DNA from: Selaginella moellendorffii
Lineage: Eukaryota; Plantae; Lycopodiophyta
Assembly (NCBI RefSeq): GCF_000143415.4
Contig: NW_003314371.1
Coordinates: 265,380 to 329,379, forward strand
Direction of reading: 5' to 3'
Length of the DNA stretch: 64,000 bases
A program made the translations under genes and the position numbers. The notes under the pieces were generated by a model. It ran no database searches. It had not been told where the DNA came from and saw only the letters and a list, made by a program, of their open reading frames with translations. Below are positions 27,962 through 59,551 of this stretch, one piece after another (the first letter of the stretch is position 1; every line of letters begins with the position of its first letter).

Positions 27962-30900
27962 TTACAAAACCTTCTTCTTTGTAGACAAGTTGAACCCGAT
28001 GCTGTAAAAGATATGCCAGCCACCATTTTGTTCTAAGAGATGAGCATTTGCATCGCCCTTCTTAAAGTGCCTGCGTCCACCAAGTTTGCATCCCGAATAT
28101 AGATGGGATCTGTATGCCAGCCGAAAAAACGGACGCTGATCTCGTTTGTGCCATCGTTTTGGCCACTCCTGAGCCTGGAAACACTCATCCCGTTCCATGT
28201 TGAGTTGGAGCCATATCCCGGACACACAAATCGGGCCTTTGGCCAAGAGCTTCAGACGTATCAACTGTTGGGACCAGCCGTGCGTAGGAAGGGCACCTTG
28301 ACGATCGAGATCGAGCCAAGGGTGTGCTCTGGAATTCCTCACGGTGGCACACGAATTAAAGAACTGTCGGAATTCTGCACTTGAGACTTCAACATGTCTG
28401 TATCGAGGAAAGCTGACAGACTCTTCTTCTTGTTCATTGACCACTTTCTCCACCACCACCTGTTTGTTCTCCCACAGTAGAAATGTAAATTCGGTATGTG
28501 CCAAGTCGAGGGGAGCAAGCTTGCGCAACTCAAACCAGCACGGCAGCCAGTCTGCAACAGTGTACCGCCAGTGCTGCCATTTCAACTCTGCCATGAACTG
28601 TGGGTCGTGAGAAAACAAACCAGCTGCGGTGCCTGCAGGATCGTAAAAAATCTTCATCTTGGCCTGCTTCACTCTCACCCCAAGAGCCTACATATCCCAT
28701 AATCCATAAAACCTGGAAGATTGTTCCGGAAGAGGCATAGGTCATGACCATCCGAGTGTCTGCTGAAAACAATGGTGTAGGTGTATATACCCCCTCTTGA
28801 TACTCGGATTTCAAAATACGAATTTCCAGTATACCTCCCATGCAGGTGTTCATAATCAGACCATCCTTGATCGTGTGCCACCAGTTGGATCACAATTGCT
28901 TGCACTGGCTTGAAACCTGAAACCGTCTCTTCCAGTAGTATCACGTCCTGCATTGGCACAAGAGGCTCTATTGCTTCAGAGTTATTTAAGTGAACAGGAA
29001 CTGCCAGCTGATTCTTGCATCCAGGAGTCAATCTGGACGAGTAGTAGCTTATGGTTTGCAGCTGGGATAGAACCTTCATAAGGATAATCAAGGTATAAGA
29101 TCAATGCCATGAGAAAGGAAATACATACCTCCAAATCACTGGGGGAGATGTGAACTTTGCTACCACTGAGATAAAGACGTTGCAATGATTTGCATTTGCT
29201 AAGGCCTGGAACGTTGGCCGCAGCCAGATAAGTTGAGTGAAGTCAAGCTTGATAGTCCGGTGACACCATGTATTTCCTTGAGATTGATGCAATTGCATAG
29301 AATCAGTTCCTCTAAGTGGTGTAGTTCTCCCAGGTCTGGCAAAAATTCAAGTTGAAAGCAGTCCCCCACGTCCAGAACTCGGGGTTGCCCGGGTATGCTT
29401 TTCAGTGCTCCTGGCAGCCCACTTACCTTGGTTAATAGGAAGCAGTGATCAAGCCGAAGTTGTTCTGTTTTGTCAAGATAGGAAATAGAGAGAGGCACGG
29501 CTTGGATGCGGCTATAAGCAATGTTAAGCCTCTTCAATGAACCGAGGCCTCCAAAAGCATGCGGCAGTTGAACAAGAGCACATCCTTCGAGATCCAGCTT
29601 CAACAGATTTTTCAGGTTCTCAAAGCCTTGAGGGAGCATGCTGAATTCCTTACAGTTCTTGAGGATCAGCTCCTCCAAGCTCACCAGCTTGCCAAAATCA
29701 GGTGAGAGCTCTGTCAACTGCGAGCACTCCGTCATGTCGAGGTTAACAAGGCTCCTCAGCTCACCAAAACCTTATCGAAACATGTGGAGAGACTTCAAGT
29801 GAGATAGCCCAGCAAACGACGTCAGGCTCATGCAGAACGAGATATCCAGATTCTCGATCTTTTTTATGTTGCCAAATGCCCCAGGGAGACTAGAAACTGA
29901 CGTGCCAGCCAGATCAAAGGTTTCCAGCCATTCAAGGTTGCCAATAGAGTCAGGGAGCTCCTGAATTCTTGAACACCACCTTAAAGATAGACTTCGGATC
30001 CTGCAGTGGCTGGGAAAGTCTTGTAGCAGAGTCAAGCTTTTGCATCCCAAGCTTTTCACTCAAGTTGGCAAGTCGTGTTAGAGCGGAACAAAATCTCAAC
30101 GAGATACGTCTGATATCTTGGATAGCTCCACGTGTTTGATGGTTGTCAAGCTTTTGCATTTATCCAACACCAACTCCACCAATTTGTCCATTACCACCTG
30201 AAATGAATGGTGAACTTATGAATGGTGATTTAACCTTTTGCGACTCGCTACCTTGTGCTCGTCATGGTCATCCCAAAGCCTGTTGATGTTGCTTCCAGAA
30301 AGGTCCAAGAAGCTGATATTTGTCTTCGAGGCGGGAGATGAATGACGAAGGCTACTATCCAAAGTCATGCCCCTCCAACTCAAATAATTCAGATATGGCA
30401 TCTGCTTAAAGCCCCCGTCGATCTGACAAGACCCCATGGTTAAGAAGGCAAGACCGTTGAGTACGTTGAAGCAACGTGTGTCTCGTCTTGAGACTTTGCT
30501 GCCAAATAAGCTCATTGTTCTGATCTTTGGAGTCCCCTGGAAAAGAACACGGAGCTACATTAACTGCTGAGTCACGTCTCATGCTTCTGGTCAAGAGTTT
30601 ATCAGCGTCTTTGTAGTTCCACATCCGGCTCCTCTCTCCAATGCTTTGGGATTCCCTGTTCACTTCCTCGTGGGCCATGTCACGTATGAGATCGTGATAC
30701 GGCATCAACTTCAAGCTTTCCAGCCGCAGTAAGTGCTTGTCCAACAAGACTTTGATATCATGGTTCATCATGCTCTCCTCGACGTCTTCCATGGCTTCCC
30801 AGATCCAGCAAACGCTTGCCCTGCTCACCTCTCCAAAGAAGCAGCAAATGTCGAGAAAGATTTCCCTCTCTCTTTGATGCAGCGGCTCCAGGCTGATGCG

Positions 30901-31956
30901 CAACTTGTCCACAACTTCTGGATAGGAGCTTAACTTGCTCTTGGCGCCTCTCCAGTAGCGCTCCCTTGGAGCATCAAACCAGCCATTTCGAGCACCAGGG
31001 GTACGCCCTTGCATTCGCCCACAATCTCTTCCACCAGGCTTCGATCCAGTCCGGCGTCCGGTTTGGCATGCTGCTCGAAAAGCATCCTCGCATCCTCGTG
31101 CTTGAGTTGACCCACTGCATGGATGAAGGTGAGGCTCCTGAGGGTGTCTCTGTCTTGGCTGGTTACAATCACGCGGCTGGAACGTCCCAGAGGAGGGAGC
31201 AGCTTCAGGAGATAGGCGTGGCTTTCCACATCGTCAAGCACCAGCAAGACGTTGACGCTGGACAGGCGCTTTTGCTGGAACAAATAATGTCGAGCTTTGG
31301 ACTCGCTGAGTTCCAAACCTGGACAGGATGCCTGCCACTCGGCCTTCACTACCAACGTACCCATTTTCACTTGGATCGTCATCTTCTCCACCGGATGCAT
31401 TCAAAAGAAACTCAAATATGTCTTTGGCAATCTTTGCAGTTGTAGCACTCGTCTGTCTGCACACCAGACAACATGTAAGTCTTAAAAAACTCTGTATGAT
31501 AGAACTTAACTCATTGAGATCCACTACATGTCCTGAGATCATCGAGACCGTTGTGAATGCCGCTATCCACTCTTGAACCTCTTCCTCAGTGGCACGACCT
31601 TTGGCTGTCAGTGCTGCAAAAGAATCTCTATAACCATGTCGGAGGGTCGACTCCATGAAAGACAGGATAAATGATTTTGCAATCCGGCTGCATCTCCATG
31701 GCTTTGACAGCCTCAAGAACTTCTGCGTTGCACCATGTTGATTCTGCAAACTTGGGAGAGAAAACAATGACATAGATATTGGCATCCCTCTGTGCCCTGA
31801 GTAATTGACTGGGGATTCCTTGTCTTGGTTGCAGCTCTTCCTTGTCAAAGAATGCACATGTTGCCTCTTGAGCTCCTGATTCAGGGAATCAGCAAATGAC
31901 AGTTTTGCATCTGGCCCTCTGTGTGATATGAAGACTTCATACTTAATTGCTGCCAT
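27962..31956 (-). pseudogene. TIR-NB-ARC-LRR gene copy 1 with post-LRR extra domain(s); frameshifted, P-loop deleted
   Basis: MAAIKYEVFISHRGPD (TIR), STWCNAEV, LLVLDDV, SRVIVTS, GVPLVL, PYHDLIRDMA and LxxLxLxxC LRRs, then C-terminal ORFs 29091-28675 and 28678-27962. Several frameshifts; the ~200 bp carrying GxxxxGKT in copy 2 is missing at ~31315. Confidence 0.85.
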
Positions 31957-32296
31957 AGAAACATGTGACTGCAAAGATCAGATTTGAACCATTGGGTGCT
32001 CGAGAAGTATTATCAGGCCACAAAGCTGGCAGACACGGCTCTTGGAGCGAGAAAGGGAGGAGGGAGTGTGGTGGGAGAAAGGGCCTCAGGGTGTCTCAGG
32101 CAAGGAGACGGGGGAATGTATGATTTGTAAATCCCCTAATTATACTTCTGCAGAGAACCCATGTGAGTCCAGCAAATAAACATGCTGATGTTTGCTCTGA
32201 ACACATTGGAGGTGGCCAATTGAGATAAGAAAGTGCTATAACATCAATCATATGCAATGTGATGACTAACATTGACACTCAACTTTTTGTTCTGGA

Positions 32297-35200: not shown

Positions 35201-37107
35201 GAACTGGTGCCGAATGAACCTTTTGAAAATACTCTCGAAAGAAAGATAAAAGGGTCATTGACTTATTCGCACAAAGCCCCTTTATTACTTGTGTAACTCT
35301 TCATTTCCCAAAAGCATCTTGATGTTCAAACTTTCCATTACAACAGCACCAACAAGATGTTGTTGATGCTAAGGTCTCCACCCAAGAAATGGAAGTCGTT
35401 AATCTAAAAAATGCTAACAATGCCGATAAGTGTGATTAACTTCATCGCATGTATAATAATGGACATTGGAACAGAACCATCTCCCACAGAAAGTGGAGTT
35501 GAAGGACATGCAACAAGAAGTGGAAGAAGCAACATTTCATAATGTTGTGCCAAGCGAAGAGCATCATCAAGGGTGGTGGGAGCAAATGCATACACAAGTC
35601 TTACAAAATCTTGACAAAGTCCCGGGCACAACATTTTCAATTTGATCCACTCTGACATATTTGGCTTCGCACGAAGCAAGAGGCTTCGGAAACGAACACC
35701 AAATTACATCACAGACTCATATGGCTTTTGACAAAGACAATACAATTATTAATATGTCAATTAATAATTATTACAATTATTAATATGTCAAAATGCACAT
35801 TTGAAAATGTCCGGGAGAATGCTCCAATTCTCATGAGTGGCTGCACTCAAACATTGTACCATTGCAGTGTTGTTCCTTAAAAATATGTGGGAAATTCACA
35901 TAAATGCTGAATATCATCCCAATAATGATCTGAAGCAATCACTGTGAAATGATTAAACCAATGGTATATATCATCCTAAGGATTCATATGGAAGAACTCC
36001 AGCCAGACTCGAGGATTGGCAACAAGAATAGGAAGAGCTATATTATGTGTCATAAATACTACTATCAATTGAGTTTGTGTTCAATTACAACCATATAACA
36101 TTGAGCAATTGCATTAATTGTTTCTCCAAAGTCAAAGGAAGAGGAGGTTGCTGCTCTGCCATGAAAATGAAAATGAACAAAAAGGAAAAAAACAAAAAAG
36201 AAGAAATTGAAAAAAACTATAAAGAAAAGAAAATCTAAGCAATGCAAAAGCTAAATTTATAGTAGAATCCCAAATTTAAGCACTCCTCAAAGACAAATAA
36301 AGTTGCCCCTCATTTTCACCAATGTGAGTATATTGTAAGCAACAAAAGGGAACGACTCGAGAAACGATCCGTTGGGGTTCAAATATAGAAAGAAAGGGCC
36401 CATGAATAAGAGTGCACCTCCTTTTCCAATCGGTCAAGGGTCTTGGGATACTTGGGGTTAAGTGTCCTTGGGTTTGAATAGTACTGGGTTGGGTGACCTC
36501 CCGGGTGGGCTGGGTGACCTCCCGGGAAGTCCAAACTCAGGAGCTTACATTTGGTATCAGAGAGGTCTCGGGTCTGACTCTGTTGGTTGGCTAAGGGAAT
36601 CACACCACATGTTGATTGACATTTGGCTGGTCCAGTTTGCTCCCGCTGGGCTCGACCCGAGGGGTAGGGTGTCAAGAGAGCGAGGCTCTTGGAAGAGTTG
36701 TGGCTCTCAGCTTCCGTTCACGAGGGCGTGAACTTGCAGGGAAGCGTGGTAGATTGTAAGCAACAAAAGGGAACGACTCGAGAGACGATCTGTTAGGGTT
36801 CAAATATAGAGGGAAAGGGCTCATGAATAAGAGTGCACCCCCTTTTCCAATCGGTCAAGGGTCTTGGGATACTTGGGGTTAAACGTCCTTGGGTTTGAAT
36901 AGTACTAGGCTGGGTGACCTCCCGGGAAGTCCAAACTCAGGAGCTTACATATATGAGATTATAGAAAATGTGCATTTTAATTAGCCTGAAAACCCTAACT
37001 TATATATAAGAGCGAGTGGTCTGGATTGAAATCAATCTAATGGCTACTAAAATCCCACCATATTAATATTAGTATATAGCATTATAACTATACATTTGGA
37101 CCTCACA
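32297..37107 (-). mobile_element. Heavily decayed Ty3/Gypsy LTR retrotransposon, same family as the element at 59818-64000
   Basis: Related LTRs at ~32297-32442 (partial, followed by PPT tcatcccctcccct) and 36323-37107 (TGTGAG...CTCACA, interrupted by a TRIM). Remnant gag/RT/RNaseH/IN peptides are collinear with the 60-64 kb element. Confidence 0.85.
36334..36949 (+). mobile_element. TRIM (terminal-repeat retrotransposon in miniature) nested in the Gypsy LTR
   Basis: LTRs 36334-36549 and 36755-36949 (TGTAAG...CTTACA), PBS TGGTATCAGAG (tRNA-iMet) at 36552, purine-rich tract before the second LTR, 205-bp non-coding interior, 5-bp TSD TATAT at 36329-36333 and 36950-36954. Confidence 0.92.
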
Positions 37108-37274
37108 ACTTGAATTTTATAATTCCCTTTAAGGAATTTGATAATTTTCTTTGAGGAAATTTATGCTTATAATTACTTTTCATTCAAAGTGGAATGTAAT
37201 TTGTTGTGTTAATACTATTCCAATTTAATTTTCAATGTAGCAAAATTATAATAATCAAGACAGTGTTTATATAT

Positions 37275-37276
<2 letters not shown>

Positions 37277-37313
<37 letters not shown>
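37277..37313 (+). repeat. (CT)n microsatellite, present only in duplication copy A
   Basis: Run of CT dinucleotides at the 3' end of the lipase-EP gene; absent at the matching position near 46130-46180. Confidence 0.9.
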
Positions 37314-37315
<2 letters not shown>

Positions 37316-39277
37316 ACATGCAAAACCTTAGTTTTTTTTTCTTTGGTCAACCACCACAAAGAGAGCTCAATGTCTTTGGCCAAGTCTTTGATATGTTCAG
37401 CACGTAATTCTAAGGTTCCTTCTTCTTCAACCCTGGCAAATAGCACCGAGTCTTGAGTCAAGGCTGGCAGAGAGCTCCCATCAATGTTTCGGCCTCCTGT
37501 AATTTGGTTGTGCCTATACCATTCTTCCAGTACCTTGTAACGCTTCGGCCTTGCACTCAAGTAGCTCCTCCCAGTGTCGTCTCTCTTCCCAAGTCGTTAG
37601 TAATTGGCAATGTCCAAAGGCTCAACCAAGAGCCTAAAAGTGTGCCCAGAATTAACCCATTTGTTCTGCGCCTTGAACGTCAGAGGAAGCAAACCATTTG
37701 AGTACATGTCTATGGTTTCATCCCAAAAGTTTGTCTCCACCATGCGGTTCAAGTTGGCTTCCAAAGCCATATCGTCATTATACAGCTTGAAGTGCTTCAT
37801 CTTTTTCTCACACTGCCTCTTGAACCATTCCAGCTTTGCCATTGCATGTAGCACCTTGGCAAACTCGCTGTGCCTGTTAGCTGCATTGGCCTCCACCATT
37901 TCCCTGGTTTTCCTGTCCTGGAAAAGCACCAACCTGTTCTGAACATCCTAGAAGACAACCAAACGTCATAAAGCCCCGTTGGGCGACTAGGAAATGCTGT
38001 TACTTTGATGCCGAGGCCCAACGCGTGAAGCTGGAGAGCAATCTCCAACTCAAACACCGATTGTGTTTCCTCCACTGCCATTTGCGCAAACTCTCCACCT
38101 AGTTTACCCATTATGTCCGGCAGCGTCTGTAGGATTTGCATGTAGTGCCATAGCGTGTGCTCCAAGATGTGTGCGGCAGGCTTGGACGAAACCCCGTGAT
38201 CCTTTTCCTGGAGTGTCAAGTGCAGCATCTGCAACACTGTGACGGGCTTGTCGATCATAGAAGCACCACTGGTGCAGAAGAGGTAAGCTCCAAAAGGCCT
38301 GTAGGGGCTCACTTTGCAAATGCTCCGGAGCAAAGTGTTAGCGAATCCGGTGTAGACCGCACTCGCGACCTGTGCAGATGCCTTGACAACAGTATTCACC
38401 AAGCTGGCCGATGCTTCTCCAATTGCAGCAGCAGTAGTAATCGCCTCTTCCTTGGCACCACCGTGTTTGATACGAGCACTAGTAGCGCTTGCTCTCGAGT
38501 TCCAGAAGGGGAGGAGCGCTCGGAGAGACTTTGAGATGGATTTGAGAGGAGCGAGGAGCATTCTGGGGACGATGTCGTGCCTGCAAACAACGTGTACGAA
38601 GTGATCGTCCCAGCCTTGACTCTGCGCAAGCTCGCTCAGCTTCACGTCGCCCACAAATGGCATCCCAAACGTGACGCACACAAATCTCAGCTTCTGGAGC
38701 TTGATCGCGGTGGCGGTGCGACTGAGATAAAGAAGCCACAGCGTGGCCAGGGCCGCAATGGCGCCTCCGAGTGAGTGGCCTGTGAAGATAATTATGTTTT
38801 GACTGTCTTCCAACTTCTCAATCTGCAAATGCGGACCTCGATCCTGAAGGGGAGAAAGAAAGAAGTAAGAACTTACGGTGTTCGTGAGTTTGCCATCTCT
38901 CCAGATTTCAGCAAATCTTCTTGTGAAGCCTCTGTGAGCCAGGGATTCAAAGAACAAGTCACTGGAACTGTTGCAGCCCCAATGCGCTGGTGCCTGCAGG
39001 CCTTCCCAGAGTGGTGAAAGCCTATAGTCGGAATCCATCACCACATCCTCTAGAACTGCGGTGCCTGGGAATGAGATCCACACCGTTTCTTCCTCAGCGT
39101 CATGGTAAAACCGTTCGCTTGTCAGCAATCCTGTAAGCCCTGGCCGAGCAGTCGAGCGACTTGAGGACAAGCTCCCCGTTCACCAGGAGCTCCGCATTCT
39201 TTGTTTAGGATTAGGATTAGCATCTGGGCTCAGGATTAGCATCTAGGCTTACATCCAAAAAGAGCACAAGTACTCAT
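37312..39277 (-). pseudogene. EDS1/PAD4-family lipase-like + EP-domain gene, copy A (5' frameshift, in-frame TAA after EPLDIANY)
   Basis: Lipase: IIFTGHSLGGAIAALATLWLL, CVTFGMPFVGD, FVHVVCRHDIVPRMLLAPL, YRPFGAYLFC, EH..HY. EP domain: MAKLEWFKRQCE, NFWDETIDM, KWVNSGHTFRLLVEPLDIANY*RLGK...RPKRYKVLEEW...LTQDSVLFARVEE. Start position uncertain. Confidence 0.85.
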
Positions 39278-39481
39278 CGAAAAAATCCAAGTCTTTCTTG
39301 ACTTAGTCTTTAAACACAATTCACTTGGACATATGATCAATCTTTGCCGAGATTCGCCACTTTTGATTTTGCTGCGAAATCTTCGACAGCGTGGCTCCCA
39401 GAGTCCTTCCACACTTTTTCCGCCACTGACAAAAGTGCGAGACACCAGGTTTCAGGCTTCGAGAAAGGTGGCAGACTTTGA

Positions 39482-40812
39482 CTAGCGTGCGCTCGTAGCA
39501 GTCAAGGGAGAAGCTGCGTAAGAAGAGCCGGTTTGTGACGTCGTCGTTGTCGTCGTCGTCGTCCAACCATGGTGGCGAATCTGTCCAAAGTAGTTGGGAG
39601 TGTCTACCGTGGTGAGCGGCTCTAGCTCGAGGTAACCCATGAGCATCGCAACCACGGCACTCATCGTTGGCCGGCTCCCTTCAAATTCTCGGCTACACAG
39701 CAATGCGACGTGCGTGGCTCGGTGAGCCTCTTCTGCGATGTAAAACTTTTCCAGTCTAGGATCGATTAATTCTTCGAGCTTTCCAGCACCAAAGAGGCTC
39801 CAAGCCTGCCACCAGAGGAAACAAGTAAGAAACACCAAGCTTGAGATCATGTTTTACCCATTGCGCAAGGATTTCTTCTTCCACAGGAAGTGTGTCATCC
39901 ATGCACTTCCTGCCGCTGATGATCTCGAGAACAAGAACTCCAAAGCTGAAAACATCGGCCTTGGAAGATAGTCGCCCTCGAAGAACGTACTCGGGTGCCA
40001 TGTATCCACTATTACACACTGGTGAGTTCCAGAATAACAAGCGAGAAAGGAGAAACGCTTACACTGTCCCGGCCAGTCTCGTGGTTGTGTTTTCTCTGTC
40101 CACTCCCGCCAGCTTGGAGATTCCAAAGTCGGAGATCTTCGGCTGGAGCATTTTGTCAAGGAGGATGTTGCTGGCCTTGATGTCCCGGTGTATAACCTGT
40201 TCGTGTGATTCCTCGTGGAGATAAGCGAGGCCTTTCGCCACTCCCACGATAATCTGGAAGCGAGCTGGCCAATCTAAGAGTAAACTCTTTCCTGGCAATG
40301 ACTACCTAGTTACAATGAGCTTAAAGGAAAGATGGATTCACTTACCGAACAGTGTTTGATCGAGGCTCCCTTTCTCGAGAAACTCGTAGACGATAAGCCG
40401 ATGATTCCCCTCGCAACAGTATCCCTCGAGCATCACAAGATTTTTGTGACGAATGCCGGTGATAATATCGATCTCATTCACAAACTCCCTCTTTCCTTGC
40501 TGAGACTCCACCGAAAGCCTCTTCACAGCAAACACGGTTCCATCGCCAAAGAAAGCCTACACACACGAGCTGACAAGTTTAGAAGTTGGCAAAGTTTATA
40601 TTTTCTGTGCTTGCCTTGTACACGGTGCCAAATCCGCCTTGTCCGAGTTTGTTTCGGTCGCTAAAGTCTTCGGTGGCCTCACACAAATCCCGGTAAGAAA
40701 ACGCAATGGGTCCTCTCGAACTCCCTGAAAACACAAAGCTTCAACAAAGCGAGAAGAAGAGGAGGAAATGTCCTACTTTGCAGTTCTGAAGAAGGAACTC
40801 GAGGCAACCCTC

Positions 40813-40843
<31 letters not shown>

Positions 40844-41649
40844 GGACCTTCTGCGCTTGACGAGCAGAAGTCCGGCAACTCCCAGGATCAAAAACACTGG
40901 CACCACAACACCAGCCACAATGGCTGCTGTGTTGCCTGATCCGCCACTGCCACCGCCTGAAAGAACGAATTCTCTTCTAGCTCAAAGCTTTGATTTGTAC
41001 CTGGAGTGCTAGCAGGAGTTGGAGGGGGAACCACTGGAGGTGGAGCTGGAGCGGAGGCATTTGGACCCAATATTCCTAGCGTCCCTGGATAAACAATGAT
41101 GGAAGAACTTTGACATTGGAAAGAAACAAGGAAAAACTTTGAGGCAAGAAACCAAGAAGCAAACCCGATGGCAAGTCTCTCGTAAAATTGCTATTCTCGA
41201 ACCGCATGTTGCATCTTTCTGCTGTGGAATTGCTCCAGAAACGGGCACCAATTGGAAATCTCTGAGTGAAACTCAATGAATCCATCGTCTAGAAGTTGTT
41301 CGAAACTTACAGCTCGGGCATTGGCATACGCCTGCTGGATGCAAGATGAGCAGCTGGGCTGGTCCGACATGTTGTAGCAAGCCGTGTGCGCGTAGGCGAT
41401 GTTGGGAAACGCACCATATCCGAGAGAAGTTGCAAATCCATTGGAGGGATTGAACCCCTGGAGGAATTCGAAGACCGTGTCGAGATTTCGCTGGAATGGG
41501 CTGCCTTCGCTGGTGTTGCCGGTGTTGTAGTAGAGAACGTTTGGTAGTTGACCTGGATCCGTGACGTCCACTGGTCGCTGCTGCTGTGCTGCGAGAGGCC
41601 GTGTGCCAAAACAAAGAATGAGAAGAAGAACCCACCACAAGCAGCTCAT
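39482..41649 (-). CDS. Single-DUF26 cysteine-rich receptor-like kinase (sdCRK), copy A; multi-exon
   Basis: Signal peptide, one DUF26 ([13 protein letters not shown]), Pro-rich stalk, TM helix, poly-Arg stop-transfer, kinase motifs [38 protein letters not shown]. One intron appears to be GC-AG. Confidence 0.9.
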
Positions 41650-41739
41650 CTCTAATCCTATATTTCCCTCCCGACCATAGATCATACATCTAGTTTTGTC
41701 AGGATTTCATCTTATATGATTTTTACCCTCGCTTGCTCG

Positions 41740-44491
41740 GTTTAGTTAATAGGAAGCAGTGATCGAGCAGAAGCTGTTCTGTTTTGTGAAGATAGGAAAC
41801 TGAGAGAGGCACGGCTTTGATCCAGCTATATGCAATATTAAGCCTCTTCAATGAACCGAGGCCTCCAAAAGCATCCGGCAGTTGAACAAGAGCACATCCT
41901 TCGAGATCCAGCTTCAACAGATTTTTCAGGTTCTCAAAGCCTTGAGGGAGCATGCTGAATTCCTTACAGTTCTTGAGGATCAGCTCCTCCAAGCTCACCA
42001 GCTTGCCAAATCAGGTGAGAGCTCTGTCAACTGCGAGCACTCCGCCTTGTCGAGGTTAACAAGGCTCCTCACCTCACCAAAACCTTGATTTAACTTCACG
42101 ATACCACATTGAAATATGTGGAGAGACTTGAAGTGAGACAGCCCAGCAAACGACGTCGGCAATGAGCTAAGGCTCATGCAGAACGAGATATCCAGATTCT
42201 CGAGCTTTTTTATGTTGCCAAATGCCCCAGGGAGACTAGAAACCGATCCAGCCAGATCAAAGGTTGCCAATAGAGTCAGGGAGCTCCTGAATTCTGGAAC
42301 ACCACCTTAAAGATAGCCTTCTGATCCTGGAGTGGCTGGGAAAGTCTGGTAGCAGAGTCAAGCTTTTGCATCCGGTAAGGTTGAGCATCTCAAGCTTTTC
42401 AGTCAAGTTGGCAAGTCGTGTTAGAGCGGAACAAAATCTCAACGAGATACTTCTGATATCTTTACATAGCTCCACTTGTTTGATGGTTGTCAAGCTTTTG
42501 CATTTATCCAACACCAACTCCACCAATTTGTCCATTACCACCTGAAAAATGGTCTTATGAATGGTGATTTAACCTTTTGCGACTTGTTACTGTGCTCGTC
42601 ATGGTCATCCCAAAGCCTGTTGATGTTGCTTCCAGAAAGGTCCAAGAAGCTGATATTGTCTTCGAGGCGGGGGATGAATGACGAAGGCAGTACATCCAAA
42701 GTCATGCCTCTCCAACTCAAATAATTTAGATATGGCATCTGCTTAAAGTCCCCGTCGATCTGACAAGACCCCTGGTTAAGAAGGCAAGACCGTTGAGCAC
42801 GTTGAAGCAACGTGTGTCTCGTCTTGAGACTTTGCTGCCAAACAAGGTCAGTGTTCTGATCTTTGGAGTCCCCTGGAAAAGAAACACAGAGCTGAGTCAA
42901 CGTCTCATAACTTACCATGCTTCTGGTCAAGAGTTTTCAGCAGTTCCAGATCCGGCTCCTCTCTCCAATGCTTTGGGATTCCCTGTTCACTTCCTCGCGG
43001 GCCATGTCGCGTATGAGATCGTGATACGGCATCAACTTCAAGCTTTCCAGCCGCAGTAAGTGCTTGTCCAACAAGACTTTGATATCATGGTTCATCATGC
43101 TCTCCTCTGACGCATGGCTTCCCAGATCCAGAAAACACTTGCCCTGCTCACCTCTCCAAAGAAGCAGCAAATGTGGAGAAAGATTTCCCTCTCTCTTTGA
43201 TGCAGCGGCTCCAGGCTGATGCGCAACTTGTCCACAACTTCTGGATAGGAGCTTAACTTGCTCTTGGCGCCTCTCCAGTCGCGCTCATCGCTTTTCCCTT
43301 GGAGCTTCAAACCAGCCACTTCGAGCACCAGGGGTACGCCCTTGCATTCGCCCACAATCTCTTTCACCAGGCTTCGATCCAGTCCGGCGTCCGGTTTGGC
43401 ATGCTGCTTGAAAAGCATCCTCGCATCCTCGTGCTTTAGTTGACCCACTTCATGGATGAAGGTGAGGCTCCTGAGGGTGTCTCTGTCTCGGCTGGTTACA
43501 ATCACGCGGCTGGAACGTCCCAGAGGAGGGAGCAGCTTCAGGAGCTGGGCGTGGCTTTCCACATCGTCAAGCACCAGCATGACGTTGACGCTGGACAGGT
43601 GCTTTTGCTGGAACAAATAATGTCGAGCTTTGGACTCGCTGAGTTCCACCTTTGAGATGTCTTTGACAATCCTGACAAAGAGGGCATTGGTGCCGTGGCC
43701 CTTAACCTCCTACCGGACCCTCACGAAACAAGATGCCTCAAAATTCCCTTGAATCCTGTTGAAAACCTCCTTGGCAAGTCTCGTCTTCCCAATTGCGCCT
43801 TGCCCAGTGATACCAACGCTTGTCACCATCTGCCCGCTCTTTCTAAACCTGGACAGAATGCCCGCCACTCGGCCTTCACTATCGACGTACCCATTTTCAC
43901 TTGGATCATCATCTTCTCCACCGGCTGCATTCAAAAGCAACTGAAATATGTCTTTGGCAATCTTTGCAGTTGTAACACTCGTCTGTCTGCACACCAGACA
44001 ACATGTAAGTCTTAAAAAACTCTGTATGATAAAACTTAACTCATTGAGATCCACTCCTGAGATCATCGAGACCGTTGTGAATGCCGCTATCCACTCTTGA
44101 ACCTCTTCCGCAGTGGCACGACCTTTGGCTGTCAGTGCTGCAAACGAATCTCTATAACCATGTCGGACGACCCCAGGATTGACTCCATGAAAGACAGGAT
44201 AAATGATTTTGCAATCCGGCTGCATCTCCATGGCTTTGACAGCCTCAAGAACTTCTATGTTGCACCACGTTGATTCTTCAAACTTGGGAGAGAAAACAAT
44301 GACATAGATGTTGGCAACCCTCTGTGCCCTGAGTAATTGACTGGGGATTCCTTGTCCTGGTTGCAGTTCTTCCTTGTCAAAGAAACAGTGCACTTGTTGC
44401 CTCTTGAGCTCCTGATTCAGGGAATCAACAAATGATACCTTTGTATCTGGCCCTCTGTGTGATATGAAGACTTCATACTTATTTCTGCCAT
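41740..44491 (-). pseudogene. TIR-NB-ARC-LRR gene copy 2; frameshifted and 3'-truncated at the duplication junction
   Basis: TIR KYEVFISHRGPDTK...STWCNIEV, P-loop GITGQGAIGKTRLAKEVFN, MLVLDDV, GVPLVL, YHD and LRRs. One base is lost just after the ATG relative to copy 1; LRR breaks off at LLTK near 41745. Confidence 0.88.
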
Positions 44492-44939
44492 AGAAACATG
44501 TGACTGCAAAGATCAGATTTGAACCATTGGGTGCTCGGGAAGTATTATCAGGCCACCAAGTTAGAAGAGCAAAGGTGAGGCCCTGGGCCACAAAGCTGGC
44601 AGCGCTTGCCGCGATTGAGATCTCTGGCCGCTCCAACACGGCTCTTGGAGCGAGAAAGGGAGGAGGGAGTGCGGCTGGAGAAAGGGCCTCAGGGTGACTC
44701 GGGCGGGGACATGGAGGAACGTGAGCATGGGAATGGAGGACACGAGAAGACCCCCACAACAAACTTTTTCCTGGCCACCACAACACTGCCAAAACAGAAT
44801 CTTCAGTTCAATTCAATTCAACTATAAATTGATGGTACCTTCTTTATGCACATAGGTCTAATCACTAGTACCTTTATCGAAGCTTAGAACCAATAGTGGT
44901 TCACTAGAGGACAACTGACACCTCTGGGCAATCCAATTG

Positions 44940-45800
44940 GCTAGCATGTTCATGCTTATCTATGCTGATGACATACTGCACGGAGGAACTTTAATTACAA
45001 ATCTGCAGCGAATCTGACCTCAACATCAACCTGAACAAAACGTGGATAATGATCTTTGGGCTAGACCAGAACCAGAAAGTCTTCTACCAATCCTGCATGT
45101 GGAGGAATACAAATATTCCAGCTACGTGACTCATTGGGGGGCAGGTGGTGTAGTGGAGCAGAGGAAAGCAGCTGAACGAGCATACTATAAGCTATTATCA
45201 GATTCCGGGAGGGCTGACTTGCACAGACGGGAAATCAACACAGTCTTTTATCTCATGAAGGTCACCACAGTTGTGTTGTATGGTGCAGAGATGTGGGGAC
45301 TCTGACTCGGCATGAAACAATGGCAATTGAGGCTCTATTCCGAGAAAACTTATGCAATCATGGTCATGGAGTTGGGCTTGTTACTGTTAGAGATCCTCAT
45401 CTGGCACCATTGTATATGTTCAGAAAAGTAGATTCTCAACTTGCAGATGCGGCAATCAACAACTCAAAAGCTCTTGACCAACAAAGGATGGTGGCACAAC
45501 ATGGAGTGGACCAAAAGATTTGGCTTCAACCTGGAGATCCTCACAGCAGTCTATCAAGAGGACTAGAGTTGTGGACACAGATAGCTCTTGTCACACAATT
45601 GAGGAAAAAGGCAAAGTACAATATTTAACAAAACTCAGTTAACTCCATGGAAATCTTTAGCCCCACTTTGTATAATAAGATCAACATGGAAAAGAAGAAC
45701 GTTAGCAAGATAACACATATGGAGTCACCACCTACTCATGGAACTCAGATGCAGAGTTCAACCACCAAGTCCACGGGACTGATGGATTTACTGGCTGATA
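44940..45800 (+). mobile_element. Non-LTR retrotransposon (LINE, RTE/L2-like) reverse transcriptase fragment
   Basis: MLIYADDIL at 44952, LNINLNKTWIMIFG, VEEYKY and VVLYGAEMWG spread over shifted frames. Boundaries approximate. Confidence 0.7.
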
Positions 45801-46174
45801 AGGGGTAACTGTCAAAAGGTTCTTTAACCACATCTTAGTGAATAAACATGCTAATGTTTGCTCTGAACACATGGGGGTGGGGTGAGATGAGATGATATGT
45901 GTCATATGCAATATGATGACTAATATTGACATTTAACCTTTTGTAGTGGAAATTTGATGGGCCTCTTGAATTTTATAATTCCTTTTAAAGAATTTGATAA
46001 TTTTCTTTGAGGAAACATTTACTTTTTCAAATCGTCATTCAAAGTGGAATGTAATATTTATTGTGTTAATACTATTCCAATTTAATTTTCAATGTAACAA
46101 AATTATAATAATCAAAACAGTGTTTGCTAATTGAGTAGCATATACTACATAATAGTTATATGACATGCAAAATC

Positions 46175-48128
46175 CTAGTTTTTATTTTCTTTGGTCAACC
46201 ACCACAAAGAGAGCTCAATGTCTTTGGCCAAGTCTTTGATATGTTCAGCACGTAATTCTAAGGTTCCTTCTTCTTCAACCCTGGCAAATAGCACCGAGTC
46301 TTGAGTCAAGGCTGGCAGAGAGCTCCCATCAATGTTTCGGCCTCCTGTAATTTGGTTGTGCCTATACCATTCTTCCAGTACCTTGTAACGCTTCGGCCTT
46401 GCACTCAAGTAGCTCCTCCCAGTGTCGTCTCTCTTCCCAAGTCGTTAGTAATTGGCAATGTCCAAAGGCTCAACCAAGAGCCTAAAAGTGTGCCCAGAAT
46501 TAACCCATTTGTTCTGCGCCTTGAACGTCAGAGGAAGCAAACCATTTGAGTACATGTCTATGGTTTCATCCCAAAAGTTTGTCTCCACCATGCGGTTCAA
46601 GTTGGCTTCCAAAGCCATATCGTCATTATACAGCTTGAAGTGCTTCATCTTTTTCTCACACTGCCTCTTGAACCATTCCAGCTTTGCCATTGCATGTAGC
46701 ACCTTGGCAAACTCGCTGTGCCTGTTAGCTGCATTGGCCTCCACCATTTCCCTGGTTTTCCTGTCCTGGAAAAGCACCAACCTGTTCTGAACATCCTAGA
46801 AGACAACCAAACGTCATAAAGCCCCGTTGGGCGACTAGGAAATGCTGTTACTTTGATGCCGAGGCCCAACGCGTGAAGCTGGAGAGCAATCTCCAACTCA
46901 AACACCGATTGTGTTTCCTCCACTGCCATTTGCGCAAACTCTCCACCTAGTTTACCCATTATGTCCGGCAGCGTCTGTAGGATTTGCATGTAGTGCCATA
47001 GCGTGTGCTCCAAGATGTGTGCGGCAGGCTTGGACGAAACCCCGTGATCCTTTTCCTGGAGTGTCAAGTGCAGCATCTGCAACACTGTGACGGGCTTGTC
47101 GATCATAGAAGCACCACTGGTGCTGCAGAAGAGGTAAGCTCCAAAAGGCCTGTAGGGGCTCACTTTGCAAATGCTCCGGAGCAAAGTGTTAGCGAATCCG
47201 GTGTAGACCGCACTCGCGACCTGTGCAGATGCCTTGACAACAGTATTCACCAAGCTGGCCGATGCTTCTCCAATTGCAGCAGCAGTAGTAATCGCCTCTT
47301 CCTTGGCACCACCGTGTTTGATACGAGCACTAGTAGCGCTTGCTCTCGAGTTCCAGAAGGGGAGGAGCGCTCGGAGAGACTTTGAGATGGATTTGAGAGG
47401 AGCAAGGAGCATTCTGGGGACGATGTCGTGCCTGCAAACAACGTGTACGAAGTGATCGTCCCAGCCTTGACTCTGCGCAAGCTCGCTCAGCTTCACGTCG
47501 CCCACAAATGGCATCCCAAACGTGACGCACACAAATCTCAGCTTCTGGAGCTTGATCGCGGTGGCGGTGCGACTGAGATAAAGAAGCCACAGCGTGGCCA
47601 GGGCCGCAATGGCGCCTCCGAGTGAGTGGCCTGTGAAGATAATTATGTTTTGACTGTCTTCCAACTTCTCAATCTGCAAATGCGGACCTCGATCCTGAAG
47701 GGGAGAAAGAAAGAAGTAAGAACTTACGGTGTTCGTGAGTTTGCCATCTCTCCAGATTTCAGCAAATCTTCTTGTGAAGCCTCTGTGAGCCAGGGATTCA
47801 AAGAACAAGTCACTGGAACTGTTGCAGCCCCAATGCGCTGGTGCCTGCAGGCCTTCCCAGAGTGGTGAAAGCCTATAGTCGGAATCCATCACCACATCCT
47901 CTAGAACTGCGGTGCCTGGGAATGAGATCCACACCGTTTCTTCCTCAGCGTCATGGTAAAACCGTTCGCTTGTCAGCAATCCTGTAAGCCCTGGCCGAGC
48001 AGTCGAGCGACTTGAGGACAAGCTCCCCGTTCACCAGGAGCTCCGCATTCTTTGTTTAGGATTAGGATTAGCATCTGGGCTCAGGATTAGCATCTAGGCT
48101 TACATCCAAAAAGAGCACAAGTACTCAT
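46175..48128 (-). pseudogene. EDS1/PAD4-family lipase-like + EP-domain gene, copy B (same lesions as copy A)
   Basis: ORFs 46645-48021, 46445-46780 and 46175-46408 match copy A, including GHSLGG and EPLDIANY*. Confidence 0.85.
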
Positions 48129-48332
48129 CGAAAAAATCCAAGTCTTTCTTGACTTAGTCTTTAAACACAATTCACTTGGACATATGATCAATCTTTGCCG
48201 AGATTCGCCACTTTTGATTTTGCTGCGAAATCTTCGACAGCGTGGCTCCCAGAGTCCTTCCACACTTTTTCCGCCACTGACAAAAGTGCGAGACACCAGG
48301 TTTCAGGCTTCGAGAAAGGTGGCAGACTTTGA

Positions 48333-49663
48333 CTAGCGTGCGCTCGTAGCAGTCAAGGGAGAAGCTGCGTAAGAAGAGCCGGTTTGTGACGTCGTCGTTG
48401 TCGTCGTCGTCGTCCAACCATGGTGGCGAATCTGTCCAAAGTAGTTGGGAGTGTCTACCGTGGTGAGCGGCTCTAGCTCGAGGTAACCCATGAGCATCGC
48501 AACCACGGCACTCATCGTTGGCCGGCTCCCTTCAAATTCTCGGCTACACAGCAATGCGACGTGCGTGGCTCGGTGAGCCTCTTCTGCGATGTAAAACTTT
48601 TCCAGTCTAGGATCGATTAATTCTTCGAGCTTTCCAGCACCAAAGAGGCTCCAAGCCTGCCACCAGAGGAAACAAGTAAGAAACACCAAGCTTGAGATCA
48701 TGTTTTACCCATTGCGCAAGGATTTCTTCTTCCACAGGAAGTGTGTCATCCATGCACTTCCTGCCGCTGATGATCTCGAGAACAAGAACTCCAAAGCTGA
48801 AAACATCGGCCTTGGAAGATAGTCGCCCTCGAAGAACGTACTCGGGTGCCATGTATCCACTATTACACACTGGTGAGTTCCAGAATAACAAGCGAGAAAG
48901 GAGAAACGCTTACACTGTCCCGGCCAGTCTCGTGGTTGTGTTTTCTCTGTCCACTCCCGCCAGCTTGGAGATTCCAAAGTCGGAGATCTTCGGCTGGAGC
49001 ATTTTGTCAAGGAGGATGTTGCTGGCCTTGATGTCCCGGTGTATAACCTGTTCGTGTGATTCCTCGTGGAGATAAGCGAGGCCTTTCGCCACTCCCACGA
49101 TAATCTGGAAGCGAGCTGGCCAATCTAAGAGTAAACTCTTTCCTGGCAATGACTACCTAGTTACAATGAGCTTAAAGGAAAGATGGATTCACTTACCGAA
49201 CAGTGTTTGATCGAGGCTCCCTTTCTCGAGAAACTCGTAGACGATAAGCCGATGATTCCCCTCGCAACAGTATCCCTCGAGCATCACAAGATTTTTGTGA
49301 CGAATGCCGGTGATAATATCGATCTCATTCACAAACTCCCTCTTTCCTTGCTGAGACTCCACCGAAAGCCTCTTCACAGCAAACACGGTTCCATCGCCAA
49401 AGAAAGCCTACACACACGAGCTGACAAGTTTAGAAGTTGGCAAAGTTTATATTTTCTGTGCTTGCCTTGTACACGGTGCCAAATCCGCCTTGTCCGAGTT
49501 TGTTTCGGTCGCTAAAGTCTTCGGTGGCCTCACACAAATCCCGGTAAGAAAACGCAATGGGTCCTCTCGAACTCCCTGAAAACACAAAGCTTCAACAAAG
49601 CGAGAAGAAGAGGAGGAAATGTCCTACTTTGCAGTTCTGAAGAAGGAACTCGAGGCAACCCTC

Positions 49664-49694
<31 letters not shown>

Positions 49695-50500
49695 GGACCT
49701 TCTGCGCTTGACGAGCAGAAGTCCGGCAACTCCCAGGATCAAAAACACTGGCACCACAACACCAGCCACAATGGCTGCTGTGTTGCCTGATCCGCCACTG
49801 CCACCGCCTGAAAGAACGAATTCTCTTCTAGCTCAAAGCTTTGATTTGTACCTGGAGTGCTAGCAGGAGTTGGAGGGGGAACCACTGGAGGTGGAGCTGG
49901 AGCGGAGGCATTTGGACCCAATATTCCTAGCGTCCCTGGATAAACAATGATGGAAGAACTTTGACATTGGAAAGAAACAAGGAAAAACTTTGAGGCAAGA
50001 AACCAAGAAGCAAACCCGATGGCAAGTCTCTCGTAAAATTGCTATTCTCGAACCGCATGTTGCATCTTTGTGCTGTGGAATTCCTCCAGAAACGGGCACC
50101 AATTGGAAATCTCTGAGTGAAACTCAATGAATCCATCGTCTAGAAGTTGATCGAAACTTACAGTTCGGACATTGGCATACGTCTGCTGGATGCAAGATGA
50201 GCAGCTGGGCTGGTCCGACATGTTGTAGCAAGCCGTGTGCGCGTAGGCGATGTTGGGAAACGCACCATATCCGAGAGAAGTTGCAAATCCATTGGAGGGA
50301 TTGAACCCCTGGAGGAATTCGAAGACTGTGTCGAGATTTCGCTGGAATGGGCTGCCTTCGCTGGTGTTGGCGGTGTTGTAGTAGAGAACGTTTGGTAGTT
50401 GACCTGGATCCGTGACGTCCACTGGTCGCTGCTGCTGTGCTGCGAGAGGCCGTGTGCCAAAACAAAGAATGAGAAGAAGAACCCACCACAAGCAGCTCAT
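48333..50500 (-). CDS. Single-DUF26 cysteine-rich receptor-like kinase (sdCRK), copy B; multi-exon
   Basis: Same exon structure and kinase motifs as copy A, with six amino-acid differences in the DUF26 ectodomain. Confidence 0.9.
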
Positions 50501-50562
50501 CTCTAATCCTATATTTCCCTCCCGGCCATAGATCATACATCTAGTTTTGTCAGGATTTCATC

Positions 50563-59374: not shown

Positions 59375-59551
59375 TGTCAATCCACTCTTGGCAAGCTCTG
59401 TAATCTGTGAACAATGCAATTCCCGAGTGGAGCATACACCCATCTGTGGCTGGAAAAGGGCAAGCTTGAATGGCTATAATAGATGGGTGTATGCTTCACT
59501 TGGGAATTGCATTGTTCACAGATTACAAAGCTTGCCTAGAGTGGATTGACA
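59375..59551. repeat. Long inverted repeat: 71-bp arms with 35-nt loop
   Basis: Arm 59375-59445 is the reverse complement of 59481-59551 at 67 of 71 positions. Confidence 0.9.

What the first reader, a model, noticed from the sequence alone, without database searches (positions are those of the whole stretch)
37312..39277. EDS1/PAD4-family lipase + EP-domain gene in an apparent seed-free plant
Seen: a class-3 lipase fold with putative S-D-H triad (GHSLGG, HDIVPR, EH) followed by hallmark EP motifs LEWFK..C, FWD..IDM, KWVN....FRLLVEPLDIANY, RPKRY and LTQDS...ARVEE. The N-terminal LLVNGELVLKSLDCSARAY...ERFYH recalls the EDS1 N-terminus, while the core is PAD4-like. Known: the EDS1 family has generally been described as seed-plant restricted. 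Inference: if the host is a lycophyte, this supports an older origin and may represent a pre-duplication EDS1/PAD4/SAG101 type.
Basis: partly seen in the sequence, partly recalled or inferred. Interest (0 to 1): 0.88.

Follow-up and report, generated by a model that had tools for sequence, protein, structure and literature searches.

The report
Broken EDS1-family immune gene in spikemoss
The spikemoss Selaginella moellendorffii carries genuine EDS1-family immune genes (lipase-like domain plus EP domain) beside TIR-type receptor genes, although papers say seed-free plants lack this family; both copies in this window are disabled, but a close relative elsewhere in the genome is transcribed.

Summary
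A three-exon gene on the minus strand (39277..37312) has a Lipase_3 domain (3e-19) and an EDS1_EP domain (4.7e-16 and 3e-6).

The window is 100% identical to S. moellendorffii scaffold GL377675.1, so the host is a lycophyte. Contamination is excluded.

- **Intron structure:** both introns (54 and 56 nt) match an angiosperm EDS1 in position and phase.
- **Ligand pocket:** all seven EDS1-side pRib-ADP contact residues are conserved. Only one of five PAD4-side contacts is.
- **Damage:** this copy is broken. The start context is lost, 2 nt are missing at 39117, and an in-frame TAA sits at the AtEDS1 Tyr474 position.
- **Second copy:** a near-identical tandem copy (about 46159..48128) shares these defects. 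RefSeq calls it 'LOW QUALITY PROTEIN: EDS1B-like'.
- **Public runs:** one holds a spliced transcript of a ~98% identical relative with an intact N-terminus. Another holds a DNA variant with TAC instead of TAA.
- **Phylogeny:** unresolved. The sequence is basal or on the EDS1 side, and the AU tests reject neither alternative tried.
- **Neighbours:** two TIR-NB-LRR genes and three CRK kinases.

Another note of this scan (s1-420247) describes the same cluster, and s1-395616 reports a further copy elsewhere in the genome.

The parts
37312..39277 (-). EDS1-family gene, copy A (the finding): remnant start ATG to stop codon
   Evidence: ORFs and sequence; Pfam Lipase_3 + EDS1_EP; tblastn with Ginkgo proteins, E about 1e-93
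39275..39277 (-). Remnant of the start codon. 'TTCGATGAG' here corresponds to 'TTCGATGGAG' at the 5' end of the expressed relative. From this ATG the window reads only 13 codons before a stop.
39118..39192 (-). N-terminal segment ELLVNGELVLKSLDCSARAYRIADK, in a different frame from the rest of exon 1
39117..39117 (-). Frameshift site. The transcribed relative has 2 more bases here (CC on the + strand), which join the N-terminal segment in frame to ERFYH.
   Evidence: table 4
38877..39116 (-). Exon 1, first part (ERFYH...KLTNT)
38823..38876 (-). Intron 1: 54 nt, GT..AG, phase 0. Same position and phase as intron 1 of Eucalyptus EDS1.
   Evidence: skipped in RNA contig X2 record 5 (table 5)
38004..38822 (-). 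Lipase-like core with the Ser-Asp-His triad (Ser 38774..38772, Asp 38576..38574, His 38159..38157) and the helix FANTLLRSICKV, which aligns with the helix of AtEDS1 preceding SPYRP
37948..38003 (-). Intron 2: 56 nt, GT..AG, phase 0, at the lipase/EP boundary. Same column as in Cryptomeria and Eucalyptus EDS1. It is not skipped in the window-type contigs of runs X1, X2 and X10.
37600..37947 (-). EP domain, first part (LEWFK...LVEPLDIANY)
   Evidence: Pfam EDS1_EP 4.7e-16; PDB EDS1/PAD4 about 3e-12
37597..37599 (-). In-frame TAA at the position of AtEDS1 Tyr474. A DNA variant in run X6 has TAC (Tyr).
   Evidence: table 3
37312..37596 (-). EP domain, second part, in the same frame after the TAA (RLGKRDDTG...RPKRY...LTQDS...ARVEE...LWW), followed by the stop. 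The C-terminus is short compared with seed plants.
   Evidence: Pfam EDS1_EP 3e-6, profile 91-142 of 211
46159..48128 (-). Copy B, a tandem duplicate. The gene body differs from copy A by 1 substitution, one 3-nt indel and one 1-nt indel. It has the same frameshifts and the same TAA. RefSeq model P0001 is 'LOW QUALITY PROTEIN: protein EDS1B-like'.
41723..44480 (-). TIR-NB-ARC-LRR gene (TNL-1) between copy B and the CRK upstream of copy A. It is split over ORFs in different frames.
   Evidence: Pfam TIR 1.4e-20, NB-ARC 1.9e-13, WHD_ROQ1, LRR; ORFs
29199..31974 (-). Second TNL-like gene (TNL-2), 90-93% identical to TNL-1, with its TIR reading frame broken
39482..41685 (-). Cysteine-rich receptor-like kinase directly upstream of copy A. 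Paralogs lie at 48333..50536 and 52844..54918.
   Evidence: called genes with Stress-antifung + Pkinase, mapped onto the window

Best explanation
This is a true member of the EDS1/PAD4/SAG101 family, with a class-3 lipase-like domain and an EP domain, in the nuclear genome of the lycophyte Selaginella moellendorffii. It most likely descends vertically from a gene already present in the common ancestor of vascular plants. In seed plants such proteins pair up through their lipase-like domains. A pocket between the two EP domains binds TIR-made nucleotides (pRib-AMP/ADP, ADPr-ATP), and this recruits helper NLRs. The Selaginella protein keeps the Ser-Asp-His triad, a hydrophobic helix at the dimer-helix position and every EDS1-side ligand contact. 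I therefore infer that its ancestor worked as the EDS1-type half of a TIR-signal receptor, probably with the TIR-NB-LRR genes next door. The two tandem copies in this window are recently disabled. They have lost the start context, lack 2 nt at 39117, and carry a TAA that removes Lys478, Thr482 and Arg493 equivalents. Intron 2 also appears to be retained in their transcripts. Shown: family membership, host, gene structure, the lesions, and transcription and splicing of a close relative. Inferred: ligand binding, a link to the neighbouring TNLs, vertical descent and loss of function.
For: Family: Pfam Lipase_3 3e-19 and EDS1_EP 4.7e-16 and 3e-6. Only EDS1, PAD4 and SAG101 chains match in the PDB. 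A family EP profile scores the X-joined translation at 5e-45. Host: 21,445 bp are 100% identical to S. moellendorffii GL377675.1, a 581 kb scaffold. Runs from 7 studies hold the stretch. Age and descent: the nearest proteins are Ginkgo at only 38-44% identity, in both the word-indexed and the exhaustive search. Both introns sit at the same alignment column as in Eucalyptus/Cryptomeria EDS1. Their phase (0) matches Eucalyptus, the only relative whose splice sites were resolved, and they are shrunk to 54 and 56 nt. Pocket: in gap-free register with AtEDS1 473 = Tyr116, the residues named in 10.1101/2022.04.01.486681 fall on R, D, N, Y, K, T and R (Arg425, Asp469, Asn472, Tyr473, Lys478, Thr482, Arg493). 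Lesions. They are shared by both copies. The TAA is kept in contigs of three other runs. The RefSeq model is flagged LOW QUALITY and ends at DIANY. Recent decay: sequence downstream of the TAA is still in frame and conserved. A DNA variant has TAC. A spliced transcript of a ~98% identical relative encodes an unbroken 206-aa N-terminus from ATG to HDIVPRMLLAPLK. The EP region shows 12 non-synonymous to 4 synonymous differences between variants, roughly dN/dS 0.76. The N-terminal part shows 5 to 7, roughly 0.2. Context: TNL genes and CRKs are adjacent.
Against: No intact full-length copy was seen. The expressed relative could be followed only to 38539, where its contig ends and its continuation is unlike the window. 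The RNA nature of runs X1, X2 and X10 is the tool's guess; only X2 is backed by a spliced, adapter-tagged contig. Apparent retention of intron 2 could be genomic DNA or pre-mRNA. The 2-nt deletion at 39117 was not covered by an independent DNA contig. No other seed-free plant appeared among the 30 hits whose clusters I looked up or among the names the searches themselves supplied. This patchy distribution also fits horizontal transfer. The tree position is unresolved. The dN/dS figures rest on 12 and 16 differences. The EP C-terminus is about 50 residues shorter than in seed plants, so even an unbroken copy may work differently.
Confidence: 0.62

Rival explanations
1. Ancient horizontal transfer. 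The gene, perhaps with neighbouring immune genes, entered the Selaginella lineage from a seed plant (gymnosperm-like donor). The family would then still have originated in seed plants.
For: The best hits are all gymnosperms. No fern, other lycophyte or bryophyte turned up among the 30 hits whose clusters I looked up or the names the searches supplied. With the algal outgroup alone, the ML tree nests the sequence on the EDS1 side among gymnosperm groups, with SH-aLRT 98 for the 22-row set. FastTree gives the same side.
Against: Identity to the nearest seed-plant protein is only 38-44%, and the branch is long (0.98-1.38). The AU test does not reject all seed-plant proteins forming one clade without it (p=0.229). 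With six outgroups it sits at the base. The introns are conserved in place but are of Selaginella size. The neighbouring TIR has no close relative outside Selaginella at E<=1e-5.
Confidence: 0.15
2. The window copies are functional. Under this reading the frameshifts and stop are assembly errors, allelic noise or are bypassed, and the gene encodes a working EDS1-like protein.
For: Sequence after the TAA stays in frame and conserved. A TAC variant and a +2-nt variant exist in public runs. Window-type contigs occur in runs that are probably RNA.
Against: Two copies carry the same lesions in a Sanger-era assembly. Contigs of three other runs keep the TAA. The RefSeq model needed a correction and stops at DIANY. 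Window-type contigs keep intron 2, which shifts the frame. From the upstream ATG the frame closes after 13 codons.
Confidence: 0.12
3. Contaminant seed-plant DNA in the assembly, or a generic class-3 lipase with a chance EP-like tail.
For: None beyond the unexpected taxon.
Against: The gene lies inside a 581 kb Selaginella scaffold between Selaginella-annotated genes. It is held by DNA and RNA runs from 7 studies. It is less than 45% identical to any seed-plant protein. The EP scores are far above the curated cut-off.
Confidence: 0.01

Closest known systems
EDS1 (Arabidopsis AT3G48090; structures 4NFU, 7XEY, 8ZF0)
   Same: The architecture is Lipase_3 + EP domain. The Ser-Asp-His triad is present, as in AtEDS1. 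The three-exon structure has both introns in the same place, and the phase matches Eucalyptus EDS1. All EDS1-side pRib-ADP contacts are kept: Arg425, Asp469, Asn472, Tyr473, Lys478, Thr482 and Arg493.
   Different: Identity is only about 30-40%. The His476 position is Leu. The EP C-terminus is about 50 residues shorter. No partner gene (PAD4 or SAG101 type) was found. The window copies are broken. Orthology to EDS1 specifically is not established.
PAD4 (Arabidopsis AT3G52430; 7XEY chain B)
   Same: The EP piece scores as well against PAD4 as against EDS1 (4.7e-12 against 2.9e-12). 'RPKRY..V.E.W' and Lys380 ('NKW') match PAD4. A sister position to PAD4 is not rejected (p=0.107).
   Different: The PAD4 ligand contacts Arg314, Lys379, Tyr383 and Phe387 are Met, Asn, Asn and Thr here. 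No ML tree places it with PAD4.
Gymnosperm EDS1-family proteins (Ginkgo Gb_07530/07529, Gb_22765 and others)
   Same: These are the nearest relatives by every search: E 7.5e-57 and 2.4e-71, at 38-44% identity. They share 'YYRLGK' and 'NKW'.
   Different: They are full-length (630-650 aa) with a complete EP domain, and they belong to large seed-plant families. Selaginella has only a small, decaying cluster.
Green-algal and bacterial class-3 lipases (Symbiochloris, Chlorella, an Acidobacteriota MAG)
   Same: They are the closest lipase-like domains without an EP domain.
   Different: They have no EP domain and are separated by very long branches.

Membership tests
EDS1/PAD4/SAG101 (EP-domain) family | N-terminal class-3 lipase-like alpha/beta-hydrolase domain | tested here: met
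   Pfam Lipase_3 3.2e-19, 69.6 bits against a cut-off of 22; aligned to EDS1 and PAD4 chains at 6e-26 to 6e-22
EDS1/PAD4/SAG101 (EP-domain) family | C-terminal EP domain (PF18117), found in no other protein family | tested here: met
   EDS1_EP 59.5 and 27.4 bits against a cut-off of 23.1, covering profile positions 1-142 of 211. A family EP profile gives 5e-45. The last third of the domain is short or diverged.
EDS1/PAD4/SAG101 (EP-domain) family | Shared gene structure (two phase-0 introns: one before the GHSxG strand, one at the lipase/EP boundary) | tested here: met
   Same columns as Eucalyptus EDS1 (exact model found, phase 0 for both) and Cryptomeria EDS1. Humulus PAD4 exon boundaries fall in the same regions.
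EDS1/PAD4/SAG101 (EP-domain) family | An intact, translatable gene | tested here: not met
   Both window copies have two frame breaks at the N-terminus and an in-frame TAA. This concerns function, not ancestry.
EDS1 proper (as opposed to PAD4 or SAG101) | Groups with seed-plant EDS1 in a phylogeny | tested here: inconclusive
   EDS1 side; basal with the outgroups. The AU tests do not reject a position outside all seed-plant proteins (p=0.229) or with PAD4 (p=0.107).
EDS1 proper (as opposed to PAD4 or SAG101) | EDS1-side ligand contacts in the EP pocket (Arg425, Asp469, Asn472, Tyr473, Lys478, Thr482, Arg493) | tested here: met
   All seven fall on identical residues in gap-free register (residue list). 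Several of them are also conserved in PAD4, so they are family-wide rather than EDS1-specific.
EDS1 proper (as opposed to PAD4 or SAG101) | Hydrophobic helix of the lipase-like domain that drives heterodimer formation ('LLIF' motif) | tested here: inconclusive
   FANTLLRSICKV aligns with AtEDS1 AFLETL-SSFLEL just before SPYRP, with the hydrophobic pattern kept. The exact LLIF residue numbers were not verified, and no partner is known.
PAD4 | PAD4-side ligand contacts (Arg314, Lys379, Lys380, Tyr383, Phe387) | tested here: not met
   Only Lys380 is kept. The others are Met, Asn, Asn and Thr (alignment to 7xey_B; residue list).
EDS1 signalling module | Binding of TIR-made nucleotides, a dimer partner and a helper NLR (ADR1/NRG1 type) | not testable with these tools
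   TNL genes are adjacent. No binding, partner or helper was examined.

The most novel reading that the evidence does not exclude
The EDS1-type receptor for TIR-made signals, physically linked to TIR-NB-LRR genes, already existed in the common ancestor of vascular plants. Under this reading the Selaginella lineage keeps a single, undifferentiated EDS1-like type that works without a PAD4 or SAG101 partner, for example as a homodimer. At least one copy would still be active: the transcribed relative, or the TAC allele. The 'seed-plant innovation' would then be only the EDS1/PAD4/SAG101 split.
Probability: 0.3. Interest if true: 0.88.

Novelty: new member of a known kind. Interest (0 to 1): 0.7.

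Why it matters
Reviews and primary papers up to 2026 state that the EDS1 family and its EP domain arose in seed plants and that seed-free plants lack EDS1. That leaves open how the TIR receptors of mosses, lycophytes and ferns signal. A genomic EDS1-family locus with a clear EP domain, conserved ligand contacts and conserved introns, next to TNL genes in a lycophyte, would move the origin of the family back by well over 100 million years (dating from general knowledge, not tested here). It also gives a concrete protein for testing whether TIR-nucleotide sensing is that old.

It explains the earlier miss as well. Proteome-based surveys could not see these genes, because one copy is annotated as a 77-aa fragment and the other as a LOW QUALITY model.

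There are limits. The existence of the gene is already visible in RefSeq, the copies read here are broken, and horizontal transfer is not excluded.

Tried and rejected
1. Contamination or a wrong taxon was rejected.

2. Reading the gene as one ORF is impossible.

3. I searched for other seed-free homologues three ways: a word-indexed search with the lipase piece, the same with Ginkgo Gb_07530, and an exhaustive phmmer search with P0001. Among the 30 hits whose clusters I looked up, the EP-bearing ones were all seed plants and the rest were algal or bacterial lipases or carried no name. Most of the top 150 hits remain unnamed, so this is not proof of absence.

4. Rooting with lipase-only outgroups was unstable. 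The root moved between the Selaginella branch and the EDS1/PAD4 split.

5. Both AU tests were non-significant.

6. I looked for a missing C-terminal exon by tblastn with four gymnosperm proteins. Nothing matched beyond 37423.

7. A search for relatives of the neighbouring TIR found only the Selaginella protein itself.

8. The fern 'EDS1/PAD4 homologues' of PMC12512272 rest on orthogroup tables from transcriptomes. I could not check whether they have EP domains.

9. The full sequence of the expressed relative could not be obtained. Its contig ends at 38539.

10. Structure prediction was not run.

Full report
**What is in the sequence**

The finding lies on the minus strand. Reading 39277 down to 37312 gives the following parts:
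- a remnant start ATG at 39277..39275, which closes after 13 codons;
- the segment ELLVNGELVLKSLDCSARAYRIADK (39192..39118) in one frame;
- ERFYHDAEEE...KLTNT (39116..38877) in another frame;
- a 54-nt GT..AG intron (38876..38823);
- the lipase-like core with GHSLGG, HDIVPR and LEH (38822..38004);
- a 56-nt GT..AG intron (38003..37948);
- the first part of the EP domain, ending in LVEPLDIANY (37947..37600);
- an in-frame TAA (37599..37597);
- in the same frame, RLGKRDDTGRSYLSARPKRY...LTQDSVLFARVEEE...LWWLTKEKK up to the stop at 37314..37312.

**Family**

Pfam gives Lipase_3 at 3.2e-19 for the lipase piece. It gives EDS1_EP at 4.7e-16 and 3.1e-6 for the two EP pieces. All three scores pass the curated cut-offs.

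Against the PDB, the only relevant matches are EDS1, PAD4 and SAG101 chains. The EP piece scores almost equally against rice EDS1 (2.9e-12) and PAD4 (4.7e-12), and much worse against SAG101 (5.6e-3).

The EP match stops at profile position 142 of 211. tblastn with four gymnosperm proteins finds nothing beyond 37423. The C-terminal third of the EP domain is therefore short or diverged.

**Host**

The best protein hit is RefSeq 'LOW QUALITY PROTEIN: protein EDS1B-like [Selaginella moellendorffii]' (P0001). Its locus on scaffold GL377675.1 (581 kb, GCA_000143415.2) is 100% identical to window 36445..57889 over 21,445 bp. The window is therefore S. moellendorffii itself.

Runs from seven studies hold the stretch. 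The next-best proteins are Ginkgo, at only 38-44% identity. Seed-plant contamination is excluded.

**Two copies**

P0001 is not the finding's copy. It is a tandem duplicate at about 46159..48128. The two gene bodies differ by one substitution, one 3-nt indel and one 1-nt indel. They share both N-terminal frame breaks and the TAA.

The finding's copy is annotated only as a 77-aa lipase fragment. This explains why proteome-based surveys missed the family here.

**Are the lesions real?**

Logan contigs of four public runs were laid on 37100..39500.

- Window-type contigs of X1, X2 and X10 (depth 6-11) cover about 37234..38568. They keep the T at 37597, so the TAA is not an assembly error. They do not skip the 56-nt intron. 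If these runs are RNA (the tool's guess), window-type transcripts retain intron 2, which shifts the frame, as in ORF 37797..39170.
- X2 also holds a 653-nt contig at depth 85 that skips exactly 38823..38876 (GT..AG on the minus strand). It carries 12 substitutions and 2 extra bases behind 39117. It ends with 15 unlike bases followed by an Illumina adapter. I rebuilt that observed contig from the listed differences and translated it. It gives one open frame from ATG: METKNAELLVNGELVLKSLDCSARAYRIADKGERFYH...GHSLGG...HDIVPRMLLAPLK. A ~98% identical relative (allele or paralog, not in this window) is therefore transcribed and spliced, and it has the N-terminus that the window copies have lost. The spliced form is absent from the DNA run X6.
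- That contig stops at 38539, and its continuation is unlike the window. Whether the relative has an EP domain is unknown.
- DNA run X6 holds a variant of 37323..38201 with 16 substitutions. One of them is T>G at 37597, which makes TAC (Tyr) instead of TAA. The variant also has a 10-nt deletion at 37402 and a 12-nt insertion.
- k-mer depth in X6 is several-fold higher over the 5' half of the gene and upstream. This suggests further partial copies in the genome.

**Constraint**

These counts are small and only suggestive. Between the X6 variant and the window, the EP region has 12 non-synonymous and 4 synonymous differences, roughly dN/dS 0.76. Between the transcribed relative and the window, the N-terminal part has 5 and 7, roughly 0.2.

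Over the long term, 38-40% identity to Ginkgo across about 550 residues, with all family motifs kept, implies selection until recently.

**Gene structure**

An exact three-exon model of Eucalyptus EDS1 places its introns after codons 107 and 356, both in phase 0. In a MAFFT alignment the first falls in the same column as Selaginella intron 1 (...KLTNT|IEKLED against ...RLRSE|VKKALD). The second is at the lipase/EP boundary (...GIK|DVQNRL against ...LNL|DATARL).

The Cryptomeria boundary at residue 382 falls in exactly the Selaginella column. Humulus PAD4 exon boundaries lie in the same regions. This supports homology of the whole gene at the DNA level and argues against a retrocopy.

**Ligand pocket**

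The pRib-ADP contacts in Arabidopsis are as follows (10.1101/2022.04.01.486681):
- EDS1: Arg425, Asp469, Asn472, Tyr473, Lys478, Thr482, Arg493.
- PAD4: Arg314, Lys379, Lys380, Tyr383, Phe387.

Tyr116 of the EP piece aligns with AtEDS1 473, and no gaps are needed. All seven EDS1-side positions then carry the same residue in Selaginella.

The TAA sits at the Tyr474 position. A truncated product would lose Lys478, Thr482 and Arg493.

On the PAD4 numbering (alignment to 7xey_B) only Lys380 is kept. Arg314, Lys379, Tyr383 and Phe387 are Met, Asn, Asn and Thr. The pocket is EDS1-like or undifferentiated, not PAD4-like.

The triad Ser, Asp and His aligns with that of AtEDS1. A hydrophobic helix (FANTLLRSICKV) aligns with the AtEDS1 helix that precedes SPYRP.

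**Phylogeny**

- In a FastTree of 144 family members the sequence falls on the EDS1 side, on a long branch.
- In a careful IQ-TREE (LG+C20, 54 rows, six lipase-only outgroups) it falls at the base, next to the outgroups.
- With only the algal outgroup it is nested on the EDS1 side, with SH-aLRT 98.
- Holding all seed-plant proteins together costs 2.4 log-likelihood units (AU p=0.229).
- Forcing it with PAD4 costs 7.3 units (p=0.107).

The position is unresolved. A pre-duplication lineage, an EDS1 orthologue and, less likely, a PAD4 relative all remain possible. Clade names were checked through cluster look-ups. Among those look-ups the EP-bearing proteins were all seed plants.

**Surroundings**

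On the minus strand the order is:
- CRK (54918..52844)
- CRK (50536..48333)
- EDS1-like copy B
- TNL-1 (44480..41723)
- CRK (41685..39482)
- EDS1-like copy A
- TNL-2 (31974..29199)

TNL-1 has TIR at 1.4e-20 with the WCxxE glutamate present, plus NB-ARC, a Roq1-type winged helix and LRRs.

Each TNL has at least one frame break that the other lacks. In TNL-1, WIWEAM is followed by a frame change before EESMMNHD. In TNL-2 the TIR frame is broken. The whole cluster therefore looks like decaying immune genes.

Papers credit this species with about 2 NLRs, no TNL and a single TIR protein.

**Literature**

The held library has no paper reporting an EDS1-family gene in Selaginella.
- Lapin et al. (10.1101/572826), Ngou et al. 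(PMC10834447), Chia et al. (PMC11218826) and a 2026 preprint (10.64898/2026.05.20.726525) all place the family or a robust EP domain in seed plants only.
- One 2025 paper (PMC12512272) mentions rare fern homologues, taken from transcriptome orthogroup tables.
- The RefSeq name shows that the gene has been visible in databases.

**Verdict**

This is a real EDS1-family locus in a lycophyte, most likely inherited vertically. It is recently disabled in both window copies, and at least one close relative is still transcribed.

Two other notes of this scan bear on it. Note s1-420247 describes the same cluster; I checked its gene content here. Note s1-395616 reports an EDS1-like lipase next to an NB-ARC-LRR on another piece of the genome; I did not check it, and it may be the transcribed relative.

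Noticed in passing
window 41723-44480 and 29199-31974 (minus strand): Two TIR-NB-ARC-LRR genes flank the EDS1-like copies. Papers credit S. moellendorffii with about 2 NLRs, no TNL and a single TIR protein. In the public record TNL-1 is split into a 214-aa TIR protein (SELMODRAFT_131977, partial) and a 161-aa protein. Each TNL has a frame break that the other lacks.
   Followed up: partly
window 39482-41685, 48333-50536, 52844-54918 (minus strand): Three cysteine-rich receptor-like kinase genes (Stress-antifung + Pkinase, 583-586 aa) alternate with the EDS1-like and TNL genes. The CRK + EDS1-like unit is an 8.85 kb tandem repeat at 98.6% identity.
   Followed up: partly
window 38539-39500, in DNA run X6: k-mer depth is several-fold higher over the 5' half of the gene and the CRK 3' end (200-750) than over the EP half (about 45). 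Loose ends at 38707 and 38838 run into unrelated sequence. This suggests more partial copies of the lipase-like half elsewhere in the genome.
   Followed up: no
window 37262-37322: A (GA)n microsatellite lies directly at the 3' end of copy A. Copy B has different sequence there, and a 1-nt indel in the preceding A-run gives the two copies different last residues (...KEKKTKVLHV against ...KENKN).
   Followed up: partly
window 16000-20000, 32000-36000, 56000-60000: AT-rich blocks (GC 0.26-0.37 against about 0.48 elsewhere) separate the gene clusters. They were not examined and may be repeats or transposon remains.
   Followed up: no
proteins P0098, P0140, P0159 (Symbiochloris irregularis) and P0244 (Chlorella): The nearest lipase-like domains without an EP domain come from trebouxiophyte green algae, ahead of any land-plant lipase among the hits whose clusters were looked up.
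   Followed up: no
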